Of a DNA stretch of 63,558 nt, positions 42,126 through 46,553 are shown one piece after another. Below the pieces are notes generated by a model. It searched no databases. It was given only the letters and a program-made list of their open reading frames with translations, and was not told where the DNA came from. This DNA is from Guillardia theta CCMP2712 (taxonomy: Eukaryota > Protista > Cryptophyta), in the NCBI RefSeq assembly GCF_000315625.1, contig NW_005434665.1, forward strand, positions 940,090 to 1,003,647, read 5' to 3'. Within the stretch, counting starts at the first letter, position 1, and every line of letters begins with the position of its first letter. The translations under genes and the position numbers were made by a program.

Positions 42126-44362
42126 TGATGACGGTTTCCCCCATCGGAGTCGGAGACCTCCGGCGAAGACTCCTCCTCGGGCGACTCGACAAAGTCCGAG
42201 GAGGAGCTGTCCTCTGGCTCGAGAAGTGCTTGCGCCCGCAAGGGCGTCATGCGCCTCGCACCAGACAAGAGCCTCCAGCGTCAGCTGCATAGTGAGGCCG
42301 CCGCTGATAGGTGGCGGCGCGTTTGCGAGCCAAGACCTCAGCAGCAGGCACGCCAGTAAATCCGTCCCTTCCATTGGTAGCTCTGCCGACCTGACCAACT
42401 TGCAAGTGGGGGGAGGTCAACCTCGACGCCCTCCATGTTGCAGCGTCTGAGAAGATTCGCAAACATCGCGCTGCATATGCCATGACTACTCCTCCTCGAG
42501 CGTTCATCCCTCTTGCCATCTCGACGGACGGTACCCTGCATCCTGACACCCTCCGCTTCATCTGGTATCTCGCGGACATCATTGCTCAGCGCTCGATGCC
42601 TCTTGAGGATGCGGCGTTTGGTCGGCACTTCGTGCCTGATGATGAGGTCTTGGCTCGCAAACGCGCCGCCACCTATCAGCGCCTCACCATCCACCTGACG
42701 CTGGAGGCGCTCTTGTCTGGTGCGAGGCGCATGACGCCCTTGCGGGCGCAAGCACTTCTCGAGCCAGAGGACAGCTCCTCCTCGGACTTTGTCACGCGTC
42801 GAGTCGCCCGAGGAGGAGTCTTCGCCGGACTGAGGTCAGGCTCCGACTCACTGTGACGTCGGATGCCTCCCGGCGGAGAGCTCAGATGGTGAGTCGACAC
42901 CACTGGGGTGCTTGCTGCTGGTCCGAGCTCGCCTGCTTCCTCCCTGGCATCGGTCGGGTCCCGCCGGGCCCGGGTCCTTGGGCATCAAGTTGCTGCGCCG
43001 TCGCCGCCGTCACGGGCCCGCCGCGGAGGCTAGCGAGGAGGACTACCTCGAGCGGTACCGTGTTCCTGTGTCCAGCCTCCCTCCGTCCGCTGCCCCAGGC
43101 GGACCCCCGGGCAACGCCGGCTCCTTGTCGGCGGCTGCCCTTTCTCCGTCCGCGGCCGCCGGCCGCAAGCCTTTTGTGGCGGCAGCGGACGTCTCGACTG
43201 ACAGTGGTCAGTCGGCTGCCTCCGGGATCACGGATTTACTGGCAGAAGGTAAAAAGTGCCTCAAGCAAACAAAGCAGGAACAAGCTAAACCTCCTGGCAC
43301 ACAGCGCACAGCGAGCCTGAAGCTGCACAAGCACACACAAAACACAAGCCCAAAAAGAACCAGCACTGCGGCTGGCAAGCGCGAAGCCGCGCAGACAAGC
43401 AGCCGAAGGGTCAAGCAATCAAGCCTGGCAACAAGCAGCAGGAGCATGCAGGAGGAATAAAATCCCTTAGACCGTGCGCTGACTCGGAGGCTAGTGACCA
43501 ACAATGGATTTACTGGCTAGTGAGGAGGACTGGATGCGTCACCTCGACTCGGCGGCGGTACCGGCGTGCTCCTGTGCCCAGCCTCCCTCTGTCCGGCTGC
43601 TCTTTCTTCGCCGAGTCCGCGGCCGCCAACAAAGCTGGCGGCCGCGGACGTCTCGACTGACAGTGGTCAGTCGGATGCCGCTCCGGGTACGTCCCCTCCT
43701 GCTCAGCGGCTTGTTACCCCTCCTCGCGACTGTTGCTTGGCCCTCCCTGCTGACAGTTGCCAGCAGTGCTGGTTCTTTTCGGGCTTGTGTTTTGTGTGTG
43801 TTTGTGCAGCTTCTCGCTGTGCGCTGTGTGCCTGGAGGTTTAGCTTGTTCCTGCCGCAGTGCTTTGTTCTGCTTGAGGCACTTTTTACCTTCTGCGAGTA
43901 AAACTTCACATCTTGTGACTACATATACCGGGGGGCGTCCTGCGTCATCAGGCACAGCACTGCCGCAGCCGGGTCAGGTGGGATCCCCGCGCCATCTCAG
44001 CGGCAGCCGGTGCAGGAGCCCTCACGCGACGGTAGAGAATCGCTCCACTGAGCATTAGGGGGCTTATGGGTTGACCTAACCTTGACCTTGACCTTCAAGG
44101 CTTGGTGCTGGTTTATGGCCGGTCTGAATAGAACAAAGTCATGCGCCTCAACGAAGAACTCGCGCAAACTCTCAGCAGGTCGGGGTTGCACGGCGGCGGT
44201 ATGCCATGACTACTCCTCCTCGAGCTTTCACCGGAGCCTCGCCGGGAGCCTCAGTCACCGGGTCTCGGACTCCGGCGGGCCGCCGACGCGCCGGCGCGGC
44301 CGGTGGGCACGGTACTGAGACGTCCTTCGCAGTGGTGACCCCAGACAAATCGCAAAAAGAAA

Positions 44363-44435
44363 TACCTCCGCACGGACTCGAACCGTGAATCTCCTGCTCC
44401 GTAGGCAGGCGCCTTGTCCATTGGGCCACGGGGGC
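44363..44435 (-). tRNA. tRNA-Arg (ACG)
   Basis: Reverse complement GCCCCCG TGGCCCAATGGACAAGGCG CCTGC CT ACG GA GCAGG AGATT CACGG TTCGAGT CCGTG CGGAGGT A. Perfect anticodon and T stems, one C-A mismatch in the acceptor stem, followed by a TTTCTTTTT Pol III terminator. Confidence 0.93.
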
Positions 44436-44791
44436 TTGCTGGTAGTACTCACCTGATTTTTATATTCCGTATGATCGTAGGAGGGGTGGGGGTACCACAG
44501 AAAGTAATAGCAAACCAAAAGGGGGTGGTAATTACCCCCATGTAACTAGACTCCCCAGCAAGGAAAACGTGGGGTAGTACGTACAGCATGTAGGGTAGAA
44601 GGGTGGGTAGTGGTGGATTTATTCGATCCCCTCAAAAAAAAAATGGATAGGGAGGGAGCCAGAAGGATGAAGAGGAAGAGCAGTATGTAGTCAGACAAGC
44701 ATGCAGTGAGGTCCAGGAGATCAAAAGAACGGAGTGAAAGAGAGATACTCGATGTAAGGTTTCGACTGTTCCCTGCAGTGCTGCACACTTG

Positions 44792-46207
44792 TCAATCGGT
44801 GGAGATGTAAGAATTTATCTGAACCTCTGCGAACTTTGTAGCACATTTGTACACAACTCTCCCCACATATGCTGCCTTGTCTGCCAGTTTTCTGCTTCAG
44901 CATGCATTTTAGGTGAAGCATGGATTACCTTTCGTCATCCATTTGTTGAATTTTTGATTCATGCTGCAGCGCGTTAGTCTCAACATTCTTCAAGTGACTC
45001 AATTTGGCGGCACCTCTTTGGCATGATGTAGTAGTTGTATGGGTGGTCATGGCCGCCAAGGCTTCTGGGGATGATGTGATCGATGTCACAGTCCTGGAAG
45101 CTGTCTACGGGACAGAGGTGAGGATGCGAGAGAAGCCAAGACCTGACCTGCAAGGGGTGAGGCACCGTCAGTGAGGCATAAGCAATGGAGGAGCTTGGGA
45201 AGGAGCACCTGTCTTGTGCTCGTGCAACTATTTCCAGCATACAGCACCAAGTCGTGAATGTAACCGCAGTAGAATCTCTCTGGCTTGTTCCCTCGTGCGC
45301 CTGAAGAACTTGTACTGTTGTGACCTTTTTCACTGGTAGCTGGGATATCCGCAGATATCAATTCCACTTCTTCATCCTCACTACTCGATTCACTCGAGCA
45401 TTGTGCGGCAAAGTTTGCCGAATATTGCACTATGGGCTCTCCCATGTCGTTAGTCTTCGGACTTGAGCTTAGCTGATGGATGTCGGAGAGTCTTGCCTTG
45501 CATGGATAGTCCCGAGCGAGATGCTGCAAGGTCTCCAAAGGTTGTTGCTCTACTGCTGGGGACATGAAGACCTTTTCGTCTATCCATTCTCTTTTCTTTG
45601 CCGACCGCTTATCCGGCTCATCCACTTCCTCCACAAGTTTTGCTTCGTCTGCTGCCTTAGACTGAGTGTCTTTGCAATAACGAGGGAGTTTTGAGCTTAA
45701 TCCGCCTCCCGTGAGTCTCATGCACCCAGGGCTTGCATGTCTTTCCGGATCAATGCGAGGATGGGTAGTTGTAAAAACAGCCTGTGCGTTCTTGTTCTGT
45801 TGAGATGCAACATTCTTGAAAGCAACGCGTTTGTGCTCTGATTCTTGGAGAGCTTTCAACTTCCGTTCAATATTAGGGAGGAGCTCCCAATTTAAATGCT
45901 CCACATTGTCATTCTGACATTTTCTTACTTCTTCAAGATCCGGAGCAATCAAGCAGTTCTGAACATGCTCTCCTGGGATGGCACCCATCAGCATCAAGAT
46001 TCTGTCCCTGACAGATTGCATATTCCGATACCGATCTTTCAGGTCCACATTACTTCGATTGTCAAGAACAGTACCTGCCTTATCTTTGATCTTCTTCCAT
46101 TTGCCGGCACCGAACTGAAGAATACCCTGTCGAAGAGCCTCATTCTCTCTTTCCGTCCATTTTCTGTTCTTTGTTTTGTTCGAATGCCGTTGCTGATCAT
46201 TTTGCAT
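44792..46207 (-). CDS. TRF-like (telobox) Myb domain fused to a C-terminal HNH endonuclease domain
   Basis: KWTERENEALRQGILQFGAGKWKKI..NRSNVDLKDRYRNM. GT-AG introns 45148-45208, 44964-45013 and 44881-44928 join it in frame to DIDHIIPRSLGGHDHPYNYYIMPKSMNQKFNKWMTKDKAAYVG. The true start may lie upstream. Confidence 0.8.
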
Positions 46208-46355
46208 CTTTCGGTCACAAATACCGAGAAATGTTGTTGTTTCTCCCGTCCAATGTTTTGCTTCAGAACATCCTACCTTCTAATCACTCTTTCTCCGATC
46301 TTCCCTATTGCCTTCTCGCTTTGTGGTTATCCCTCCCTCTCCCTTTCGTGATCGC

Positions 46356-46553
<198 letters not shown>

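What the first reader, a model, noticed from the sequence alone, without database searches (positions are those of the whole stretch)
44792..46207. Telobox (TRF-type Myb)-HNH nuclease fusion gene beside the retroelement island
Seen: a single Myb repeat ending NRSNVDLKDRYRN, close to the telobox consensus VDLKDKWRN. Three canonical introns (61, 50 and 48 nt) splice it in frame to an HNH motif DHIIP..GG..HPYN..N. The ORF track splits the two domains, so the fusion is easy to miss. Known: teloboxes bind double-stranded telomeric-type repeats, and HNH domains nick or cut DNA. I know of no characterised protein with this pairing. Inference: a repeat-targeted nuclease, for example in telomere processing or a domesticated mobile nuclease. 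Its position ~0.6 kb from a heavily cut island may be coincidence.
Basis: partly seen in the sequence, partly recalled or inferred. Interest (0 to 1): 0.8.

Follow-up and report, generated by a model that had tools for sequence, protein, structure and literature searches.

The report
Telomere-type Myb fused to HNH nuclease
This is a real, expressed, single-copy gene of the alga Guillardia theta that joins a telomere-repeat-type Myb DNA-binding domain to an HNH-type nuclease domain with intact catalytic residues; the pairing also occurs in a haptophyte, I found no description of it, and its function is untested.

Summary
The window is Guillardia theta CCMP2712 nuclear DNA. The gene is GUITHDRAFT_134028 on the minus strand.

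Transcript contigs from three studies remove exactly those introns. The true CDS is 46207..44721, five exons, 427 aa. It is identical to a complete MMETSP ORF (P0004). The deposited 400-aa model has a wrong 3' end.

The Myb passes Pfam's cut-off, and its best solved-structure matches are all TRF1/TRF2/Terfa/plant TBP1.

The C-terminal ~120 aa reach only a borderline Pfam HNH_4 score. However, they belong to a family of at least 263 protein clusters in which His357, Asn371 and Asn380 are invariant. The H-14-N-9-N spacing matches that seen in the Cas9 HNH alignment. A confident AlphaFold model (pLDDT 93) shows a beta-beta-alpha core, and its structural neighbours are mainly HNH nucleases, though individually weak.

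About ten relatives, including one from the haptophyte Diacronema lutheri, also carry one to four Myb repeats, one of them telobox-like. Other relatives lack a Myb and sit on compact, possibly viral, contigs.

G. theta telomeres are (TTTAGGG)n. Targeting of telomeric repeats and nuclease activity are inferred, not shown. The neighbouring retroelement island is probably a coincidence.

The parts
44605..46384 (-). Approximate transcript span. The 5' UTR runs from 46208 to about 46384 and the 3' UTR from 44720 down to about 44605.
   Evidence: transcript contigs of 1521-1577 nt from runs X1, X2 and X3 lie on 44605/44628/44661..46300. X1 runs 84 nt beyond 46300.
45209..46207 (-). Coding exon 1 (residues 1-333): Myb domain, poorly conserved linker, and the start of the conserved C-terminal domain.
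46019..46162 (-). Telobox-type single Myb repeat (residues 16-63). The recognition helix reads VDLKDRYRN.
   Evidence: Pfam PF00249 at 35.2 bits, above the 24.4 cut-off. Best PDB matches are TRF2/TRF1/Terfa/plant TBP1. Coordinates.
45148..45208 (-). Intron 1, 61 nt, GT..AG.
45014..45147 (-). Coding exon 2. Carries Asp356-His357 (45076-45081) and Asn371 (45034-45036) of the HNH motif.
44964..45013 (-). Intron 2, 50 nt, GT..AG, with CTAAC branch-point-like motif.
44929..44963 (-). Coding exon 3 (35 nt). Carries Asn380 (44957-44959), the last residue of the H-N-N triad.
44881..44928 (-). Intron 3, 48 nt, GT..AG.
   Evidence: The deposited model P0001 uses a different acceptor here.
44825..44880 (-). 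Coding exon 4 (56 nt). Carries invariant Lys391 (codon at 44876-44878).
44781..44824 (-). Intron 4, 44 nt, GT..AG.
   Evidence: joint 44780/44825 in X1, X2 and X3 contigs and one X20 raw read..
44721..44780 (-). Coding part of exon 5 (last 19 residues plus stop TGA at 44721-44723).
   Evidence: The C-terminus is conserved in Hanusia phi P0005.
44724..45286 (-). Conserved C-terminal HNH-type domain (residues 308-427), spread over exons 1-5.

Best explanation
GUITHDRAFT_134028 encodes a 427-aa nuclear protein in which a DNA-binding domain is tethered to a nuclease.

Shown:
- It is one five-exon mRNA.
- It has an N-terminal TRF/telobox-type Myb repeat.
- It has a C-terminal ~120-aa domain of the HNH (beta-beta-alpha-metal) superfamily. 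The Asp-His...Asn...Asn residues are conserved across a family of at least 263 protein clusters.
- The Myb+HNH architecture recurs in a haptophyte and in environmental eukaryotes.

Inferred:
- Myb helix 3 (KDRYR) and the basic N-terminal arm bind duplex TTTAGGG-type repeats, which are the telomere repeat of G. theta. Binding would work as in TRF1/TRF2 and plant TBP1, possibly as a dimer through the central helical region.
- This places the HNH site on neighbouring DNA. His357 would act as the general base, and Asn380 (with Asp356) would hold a divalent metal, so the domain nicks or cuts.
- The most likely role is processing or surveillance of telomeric or telomere-like repeat DNA. In that case it would be a one-polypeptide counterpart of nucleases that shelterin recruits to telomeres.
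For: Gene and splicing:
- One search shows four GT..AG joints in contigs of three studies.
- One search shows the spliced translation is identical to P0004.
- The catalytic residues are split over exons 2, 3 and 4, so only the spliced mRNA encodes the motif.

Myb:
- PF00249 at 35 bits, above the 24.4 cut-off.
- the top 15 PDB sequences are all TRF1/TRF2/Terfa (E 9e-8 to 1.5e-5), followed by plant TBP1/TRP and Tbf1. c-Myb scores 0.03.
- The K-D-R-x-R of helix 3 aligns with TRF2 KDRWR.

HNH:
- HNH_4 scores 23.2-23.9 bits (cut-off 22) on the isolated domain.
- The Cas9d and IscB HNH segments match in NCBIfam, E 8e-6.
- PHROG HNH families match.
- The family profile's best PDB hits are Cas9 HNH domains, aligned on DH..N..N.
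- D52, H53, N76, K87 and G92 are invariant in 40 domains. H357, N371 and N380 are the only invariant columns in 60 full-length relatives.
- The AF2 model has pLDDT 93.1 and pTM 0.84, with strand 49-53, strand 68-72 and helix 73-79.
- Structural neighbours are overwhelmingly HNH nucleases.

Conservation and context:
- Domain-wise conservation against Hanusia is 73% (Myb), 32% (linker) and 85% (C-domain).
- Myb+HNH relatives appear. A single origin of the fusion is not rejected (p-AU 0.70).
- The telomere repeat is TTTAGGG: 1775 matches, sited at scaffold ends in the places listed, against none for five tandem TTAGGG units.
- Helix-3 and N-terminal-arm recognition of TTTAGGG by a plant telobox domain is described in PMC2377444.
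Against: - No biochemical data exist for any member of the family.
- Every sequence or structure match to a characterised HNH is weak on its own: Pfam is borderline, PDB profile E is 0.08-0.45, Foldseek PDB E is at least 0.06, and VIA Z is at most 4.2.
- The domain lacks the zinc-binding cysteine pairs of many HNH enzymes.
- The helix-3 Trp of the telobox is Tyr here.
- A single Myb repeat usually needs dimerisation, and no TRFH domain or other known dimerisation domain was detected.
- G. theta has other telobox-like Mybs, one with a canonical VDLKDKWRNL. An earlier scan note reports a telobox Myb fused to an unrelated domain in this genome. Telobox-type Mybs here may therefore be general DNA-binding modules rather than telomere-specific ones.
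- Most family members carry no Myb at all.
Confidence: 0.6

Rival explanations
1. The protein is a chromatin or transcription factor rather than a working nuclease. The telobox-type Myb would bind short interstitial 'telo-box'-like promoter elements, as plant TRB proteins do. The HNH-like domain would serve as a DNA- or protein-binding module, or act on something other than telomeric DNA.
For: - G. theta has several telobox-like Mybs.
- An earlier, unchecked note reports a telobox Myb joined to a pseudokinase, which suggests modular regulatory use.
- The Myb is N-terminal, as in plant SMH/TRB proteins (my own knowledge).
- No zinc site is present.
- Similarity to characterised HNH enzymes is weak.
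Against: - His357, Asn371 and Asn380 are the only invariant columns over 60 relatives at about 20-35% identity, and Asp356 is nearly invariant. This is the pattern expected of a maintained active site, not of a degenerate scaffold.
Confidence: 0.17
2. The gene is a captured or domesticated nuclease from a mobile or viral source. The HNH domain family would circulate in large DNA viruses of protists. In that case the cellular Myb-HNH proteins act in defence or conflict, for example by cutting foreign DNA, and the Myb supplies DNA affinity unrelated to telomere maintenance.
For: - The best viral-structure match, BFVD V5LQG6, covers the whole domain (E 7.8e-7, TM 0.77, 27% identity).
- An ESM Atlas cluster labelled Nucleocytoviricota matches at TM 0.50/0.59.
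- Myb-less relatives lie on compact intronless contigs beside DNA methyltransferases, helicases and ORFans. One of these contigs is 30% GC.
- DNA-binding-domain-plus-HNH is the classical homing-endonuclease layout (my own knowledge).
Against: - The G. theta gene is single-copy, has four spliceosomal introns and is expressed.
- It has an ortholog under domain-wise purifying selection in Hanusia.
- Two scans of IMG/VR found no relative.
- The viral nature of the metagenomic contigs was not established.
- Origin and present function are separate questions, so this rival overlaps with the best explanation.
Confidence: 0.2
3. The fusion is a gene-model artefact: two separate genes, or a Myb-only protein produced by retention of intron 1, giving the 373-aa ORF 45086-46207.
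For: - The unspliced ORF stays open through intron 1.
- One ENA protein (P0002) and one Hanusia EukProt entry (P0006) lack the HNH core.
Against: - Three independent transcript assemblies contain only the fully spliced form.
- The MMETSP ORFs of Guillardia and Hanusia both carry both domains.
- P0002 simply reads into the intron of a genomic contig.
- Distant relatives have the same architecture in single ORFs.
Confidence: 0.02

Closest known systems
TRF1/TRF2 (vertebrates), Terfa (zebrafish), and the plant telomere-binding proteins NgTRF1/TBP1, AtTRP1 and RTBP1
   Same: A single three-helix Myb repeat with a telobox-type recognition helix. These are the best sequence matches among solved structures. 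The K-D-R-x-R residues of helix 3 and a basic N-terminal arm are present. The host telomere repeat is TTTAGGG, as in plants.
   Different: No TRFH domain and no plant Myb-extension or H1/H5 domain was detected. The Myb is N-terminal. The helix-3 Trp is replaced by Tyr. The protein carries a nuclease domain, which none of these proteins has.
HNH nuclease domains of Cas9/IscB (Pfam HNH_4) and of McrA-type restriction enzymes and colicin DNases
   Same: A beta-beta-alpha-metal core with a D-H ... N ... N signature. The H-14-N-9-N spacing matches the SpCas9 HNH alignment. These are the best profile and structure matches.
   Different: Only about 12-23% identity and weak scores. There are no zinc cysteines. 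The family has its own N-terminal helical extension with a conserved Trp, and a C-terminal pair of helices with an invariant Lys and Gly (E-K-x-x-Y-V-G). It is a distinct, unnamed subfamily found in protists and probably in their large viruses.
Modular HNH homing endonucleases with attached DNA-binding domains (I-HmuI type; HNH-AP2 proteins). This comparison is from my own knowledge, plus PMC12220804 for the NUMOD4-HNH_3-AP2 protein in polinton-like viruses.
   Same: The same logic: an HNH catalytic module aimed by a separate sequence-reading domain. In both cases the attached domain type is otherwise known from eukaryotic DNA-binding proteins.
   Different: The gene is single-copy, contains introns and is conserved between genera, and it shows no sign of residing in an intron, an intein or a mobile element. 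The HNH subfamily is different (not HNH_3).
Shelterin-recruited nucleases (TRF2-Apollo, TRF2-SLX4-SLX1). This comparison is from my own knowledge.
   Same: A telomere-repeat-binding Myb brings a nuclease to telomeric DNA. This is functionally what the best explanation proposes.
   Different: In those systems, binding and cutting are on separate polypeptides and the nucleases have other folds (metallo-beta-lactamase, GIY-YIG). In this gene the two are covalently joined, and the telomeric role is only inferred.

Membership tests
HNH (beta-beta-alpha-metal) nuclease superfamily | Two antiparallel strands followed by a helix (the beta-beta-alpha core) | tested here: met
   The AF2 model of P0004:305-427, built with a 40-sequence alignment, has pLDDT 93.1. 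It shows a strand at model residues 49-53, a strand at 68-72 and a helix at 73-79. This is a predicted structure, not a solved one.
HNH (beta-beta-alpha-metal) nuclease superfamily | Catalytic His at the end of strand 1 (usually preceded by Asp), a structural Asn, and a metal-binding Asn or His in the helix | tested here: met
   D356-H357, N371 and N380 are present. H357, N371 and N380 are invariant in 60 relatives and D356 is nearly invariant. The spacing is H-14-N-9-N, as in the aligned Cas9 HNH.
HNH (beta-beta-alpha-metal) nuclease superfamily | Score above the curated Pfam threshold for an HNH family | tested here: inconclusive
   HNH_4 scores 23.2-23.9 bits against a cut-off of 22 on the isolated domain, but 21.1-21.3 on the whole protein. 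HNH_5 (about 21 against 27.5) and HNH (about 16 against 21.4) fall below their cut-offs.
HNH (beta-beta-alpha-metal) nuclease superfamily | Structural similarity to solved HNH enzymes | tested here: inconclusive
   Nearly all top rows are HNH or beta-beta-alpha-metal nucleases (ScoMcrA, Cas9, McrA, colicin E7/E9, IscB). However, Foldseek E is at least 0.06, TM is 0.3-0.4 and VIA Z is at most 4.2. Matches to predicted models are stronger: BFVD E 7.8e-7 with TM 0.77, and Atlas HNH clusters at TM 0.4-0.5.
HNH (beta-beta-alpha-metal) nuclease superfamily | Metal-dependent nuclease activity | not testable with these tools
   Needs a biochemical assay.
Telobox / TRF-type Myb DNA-binding domains | Single Myb/SANT-like three-helix repeat above the Pfam threshold | tested here: met
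   PF00249 scores 34.7-35.2 bits against a cut-off of 24.4. PF13921 scores 28-31 against 22.9.
Telobox / TRF-type Myb DNA-binding domains | Telobox motif in helix 3 (consensus VDLKDKWRN, quoted from my own knowledge) | tested here: met
   The sequence reads VDLKDRYRN, which is 7 of 9 identical with K to R and W to Y changes. It aligns to TRF2 KDRWRTM.
Telobox / TRF-type Myb DNA-binding domains | Closer to telomere-binding Mybs than to c-Myb, SANT or SHAQKYF classes | tested here: met
   In the PDB ranking, TRF2/TRF1/Terfa score 9e-8 to 1.5e-5 and plant TBP1/TRP score 2e-5 to 4e-4. MYB21 scores 0.009, c-Myb 0.03 and a SHAQKYF protein 0.14. No formal phylogeny of Myb classes was made.
Telobox / TRF-type Myb DNA-binding domains | Binding to duplex telomeric repeats | not testable with these tools
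   I could only show that the host telomere repeat is TTTAGGG.
TRF1/TRF2 orthologs (shelterin) | TRFH dimerisation domain N-terminal to a C-terminal Myb | tested here: not met
   Residues 66-300 give no Pfam match at all, even at E up to 10. The Myb is N-terminal. This protein is not a TRF1/TRF2 ortholog.
Plant SMH/TRB family | N-terminal telobox Myb plus a central linker-histone H1/H5 domain | tested here: not met
   The Myb is N-terminal, but no H1/H5 (linker histone) domain was detected.

The most novel reading that the evidence does not exclude
Cryptophytes and haptophytes share a dedicated telomere-repeat-directed HNH nuclease. It would be a single polypeptide that both reads (TTTAGGG)n and cuts or nicks it, and would do telomere end-processing or trimming that other eukaryotes achieve by recruiting separate nucleases to shelterin. 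The catalytic module would be shared with large DNA viruses of the same hosts.
Probability: 0.25. Interest if true: 0.8.

Novelty: new variant of a known kind. Interest (0 to 1): 0.6.

Why it matters
Telobox Mybs and HNH nucleases are each well known. A conserved covalent pairing of the two is not described in the literature I could search. If the Myb does read telomeric repeats, this would be a natural repeat-directed nuclease at or near chromosome ends in two major algal lineages. That would be a directly testable lead on how telomere ends or interstitial telomere-like repeats are processed outside animals, fungi and plants.

Independently of function, three results stand:
- The work defines an unnamed HNH subfamily of at least 263 protein clusters, with its own extensions, in protists and probably in their giant viruses.
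- It corrects the public gene model.
- It shows that the HNH domain goes unannotated because it falls just under Pfam thresholds.

Tried and rejected
- Single-sequence AlphaFold of the whole protein gave an unusable model (pLDDT 44.8).
- A sequence search of PDB with the C-domain alone found nothing meaningful. The best hit was a chance-level Spx N-terminal match, E 0.22.
- The word-based homolog search with the C-domain region and with an 11-sequence full-length profile recovered little beyond the cryptophyte cluster. The second was swamped by Myb words.
- Two IMG/VR scans found no viral relatives.
- The GTDB genome-contig scan could not run, because no conserved stretch was suitable. Presence in prokaryotes was therefore not tested.
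- tRNA targeting as an explanation for the neighbouring retroelement island got no support: there is no tRNA gene in 11 other loci carrying the same repeat.
- The HNH genes of cryptophyte polinton-like viruses described in PMC12220804 are a different kind (HNH_3 or helicase fusions) and are unrelated to this gene.
- The raw-read RNA run X20 gave only 22 reads, biased to the 3' end, so it adds little beyond one read on the fourth joint.
- I sent no hand-joined spliced sequence to any search tool. Searches used exon references or stored database proteins (P0001, P0004, P0005).
Full report
**Identity of the locus.** Exon 1, searched by reference, matched GUITHDRAFT_134028 of Guillardia theta CCMP2712 at 100% identity (P0001, 400 aa). 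The window is G000:C9:940090-1003647 of that 87-Mb assembly. The gene lies on the minus strand.

**Gene structure.**
- The ORF table shows a 373-aa ORF (45086-46207) with the Myb, and a separate ORF (44980-45333) with the motif DIDHIIPRSLGGHDHPYN.
- I laid four runs on 44600-46300. Logan contigs from X1, X2 and X3, which come from three different studies, each lie on the window in five blocks without a single mismatch. They also skip a further 44 nt (44781-44824, CT..AC on the plus strand).
- One raw read of the RNA run X20 shows the fourth joint. X20 otherwise gave only 22 reads, concentrated at the 3' end.
The reading frame continues through exon 5 to a TGA at 44723-44721.
- The five-exon translation (1284 nt, 427 aa) is identical to P0004, an MMETSP transcript ORF marked 'complete' that sits in the same 90% cluster as the NCBI model.
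- An in-frame stop precedes the ATG.
- The NCBI/JGI model P0001 already joins the two domains but mis-splices the end, finishing in 11 wrong residues.
- The joining of exons was done only inside scripts, to check the frame and identity with P0004. All searches used exon references or stored database proteins.

**Orthologs and selection.**
- Hanusia phi has a 412-aa ortholog (P0005, UniRef A0A7S0EEA8, named only 'Myb-like domain-containing protein').
- Identity to the G. theta protein is 73% over the Myb region, 48% over residues 76-135, 32% over the linker and 85% over residues 308-427. Both ends are therefore under constraint and the middle is not.
- The gene is single-copy in G. theta for both domains at the sensitivity used.

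**The Myb.**
- Pfam Myb_DNA-binding scores 35 bits against a cut-off of 24.4.
- Against all PDB sequences, the 15 best distinct chains are zebrafish Terfa and human TRF2 and TRF1 (E 9e-8 to 1.5e-5). Next come SNAPC4, tobacco/Arabidopsis/rice telomere-binding proteins and yeast Tbf1. MYB21 and c-Myb follow at 0.009-0.03, and a SHAQKYF Myb at 0.14.
- The alignments show helix 3, LKDRYRNM, against TRF2 IKDRWRTM.
- In NgTRF1 and hTRF1, helix 3 reads the major groove and the N-terminal arm reads the minor groove of telomeric DNA (PMC2377444). The G. theta protein has both the K-D-R-x-R helix and a basic arm (KTKNRKW).
I made no formal tree of Myb classes.
- The protein is not a TRF1/2 or TRB ortholog. 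Residues 66-300 match no Pfam family.

**Host telomeres.** Four tandem TTTAGGG units occur 1775 times in the assembly. In the places listed they sit at scaffold ends in the expected orientation. Five tandem TTAGGG units do not occur at all. The window itself holds no such repeat and is not subtelomeric.

**The C-terminal domain.**
- Taken alone, it reaches HNH_4 at 23-24 bits (cut-off 22). It stays below the HNH_5 and HNH cut-offs.
- NCBIfam matches the HNH segments of Cas9d (E 8e-6) and IscB. PHROGs gives a dozen HNH endonuclease families at E 4e-4 and weaker.
- Because the family scans left the domain open, I ran the exhaustive profile search with the two cryptophyte domains. It found 263 representatives at E of 1e-3 or better, and 62 at 1e-10 or better. 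Most cover profile positions of about 15-130, which is the whole 115-aa domain.
- In a 40-sequence domain alignment at 28-39% identity to the query, Asp52, His53, Asn76, Lys87 and Gly92 are invariant. Asn67, two Gly, Trp33 and others are nearly invariant.
- In an alignment of 60 full-length relatives, the only invariant columns are His357, Asn371 and Asn380.
- The spacing is H-14-N-9-N. The family profile's best PDB matches, although only E 0.08-0.45, are three Cas9 HNH domains aligned on exactly these residues.
- Cysteines are not conserved, so there is no zinc finger.
- With the 40-sequence alignment, AlphaFold gave pLDDT 93.1 and pTM 0.84. The model has strand 49-53 (ending in Asp-His), strand 68-72 and helix 73-79 (carrying Asn76). 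Three short helices precede this core and two follow it.

**Structural neighbours of the model.**
- Foldseek against PDB: ScoMcrA, Cas9 HNH domains, EcoKMcrA, Gme HNH and ZRANB3 HNH (E 0.06-1.5, TM 0.3-0.4).
- VIA-align against 48,161 chains: colicin E7 and E9, Vvn, IscB, Cas9, McrA, PtuB and GVE2 HNH (Z up to 4.2).
- ESM Atlas: clusters carrying HNH/HNH_5/HNH_4 at TM 0.4-0.5.
- BFVD: a viral protein, V5LQG6, at E 7.8e-7, TM 0.77 and 27% identity over the whole domain, then many phage HNH endonucleases.
- Each match to a solved enzyme is weak. Together with the invariant triad, I take the HNH fold and an intact active site as well supported, and activity itself as inferred.

**The pairing is a family trait.**
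- Among the hits, P0010, P0011, P0022, P0023, P0025/P0160, P0027, P0028, P0045 and P0099 carry one to four Myb repeats N-terminal to the same domain. In total, 10 of 60 long relatives match PF00249, and one carries a SAP domain instead.
- P0023 is KAG8466264.1 of the haptophyte Diacronema lutheri. P0010 lies on a contig with LRR and WD40 genes.
- In these proteins the repeat next to the linker is telobox-like, for example RSNVNLKDKHR and RTNVQLKDKYR. The single Myb of G. theta aligns with that repeat.
- In a quick maximum-likelihood tree of 117 domains, 11 of the 13 Myb-bearing rows form one group (SH-aLRT 93). The cryptophyte pair sits elsewhere on an unresolved backbone.
- Constraining all Myb-bearing rows to one clade gives a better likelihood (+8.9 lnL) and p-AU 0.70. 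One origin of the fusion is therefore compatible with the data but not shown.
- Myb-less members include Euglena mutabilis and Paulinella micropora proteins.
- Other Myb-less members are metagenomic genes on compact, intronless contigs beside DNA methyltransferases, UvrD/DEAD helicases and ORFans. One such contig is 30% GC. An Atlas cluster labelled Nucleocytoviricota and the BFVD hit point the same way. Two IMG/VR scans were blank.

**Mechanism.**
- Shown: one mRNA, two constrained domains, a TRF-type Myb, an HNH-type domain with a conserved triad, and a recurring architecture.
- Inferred: the Myb docks on duplex TTTAGGG-type DNA and the HNH domain nicks or cuts nearby.
- The catalytic residues are split over exons 2, 3 and 4, so only full splicing yields the active-site motif.
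- Caveat on a telomere-specific role: G. theta has other telobox-like Mybs, one with the canonical VDLKDKWRNL at C9:1114172-1114291. An earlier scan note describes a telobox Myb fused to a kinase-like domain in this genome (I did not verify it, and one search did not link it to my loci).
- I put 0.6 on 'DNA-tethered active HNH nuclease'. Within that, I put roughly 0.25 on a genuine telomere-processing role.

**Neighbourhood.** The end of the retroelement island nearest the gene belongs to a repeat with at least 467 matches on many scaffolds. None of 11 other loci holds a tRNA gene. A single-copy gene lying beside one of many islands needs no special explanation.

**Literature.** Full-text searches combining HNH with Myb, telomere, telobox or Guillardia returned nothing on such a protein. 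The HNH genes of cryptophyte polinton-like viruses are of other types.

**Verdict.** This is a new architectural variant built from two known domain kinds. It is conserved across at least two algal lineages, and its function is untested.

Noticed in passing
window 44781-44928 and 44721-44780: The deposited model XP_005839323/EKX52343 (400 aa) mis-splices the 3' end. It skips exon 4 and reads into intron 4, ending in 11 residues that are absent from the transcripts. The transcript-supported product is 427 aa.
   Followed up: yes
window 46357-46553: A long (CTGT)n microsatellite, about 50 units, begins about 150 bp upstream of the start codon. One transcript contig extends 84 nt past 46300, so the 5' UTR or transcription start reaches into the edge of the repeat.
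   Followed up: no
window 44363-44435 (minus strand): tRNA-Arg(ACG), the only tRNA gene in the window. It lies between the retroelement island (which ends at about 44235) and the 3' end of the Myb-HNH transcript (about 44605).
   Followed up: partly
window 43300-44235; loci L016-L026: Fragments of the neighbouring retroelement occur at least 467 times in the genome. They are often clustered in both orientations within a few kb on the same scaffold (for example C43, C108, C314). No tRNA genes lie next to 11 sampled copies.
   Followed up: partly
G000:C9:1114172-1114291 (L031), about 110 kb beyond the window; also C16:921292-921408 (L028) and C295:8361-8498 (L029): These are other telobox-like Myb exons in G. 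theta. The C9 one reads ...SAVDLKDKWRNLQK, a canonical telobox, and is split by an intron. The genes were not characterised.
   Followed up: partly
P0006 (Hanusia phi, EukProt, 324 aa): This isoform or assembly joins the end of the linker directly to the post-HNH helices, omitting the whole HNH core, and then reads into the last intron. It could be an HNH-less splice form or a mis-assembly.
   Followed up: no
L010-L014 (metagenomic contigs carrying P0021, P0039 and P0017): Myb-less members of the same HNH subfamily lie on compact intronless contigs. Their neighbours include N6/N4 and C5 DNA methyltransferases, UvrD and DEAD helicases, a 2076-aa ORF and many ORFans. L014 is 30% GC. This looks like giant-virus or other large-virus DNA, but that is unproven.
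   Followed up: partly
P0004 residues 321-347 (window about 45167-45247, spanning intron 1): There is a weak resemblance to the N-terminus of Spx/ArsC-family proteins (PDB E 0.22; NCBIfam Spx E 0.04). The CxxC motif is not conserved in the family, so this is probably chance.
   Followed up: partly
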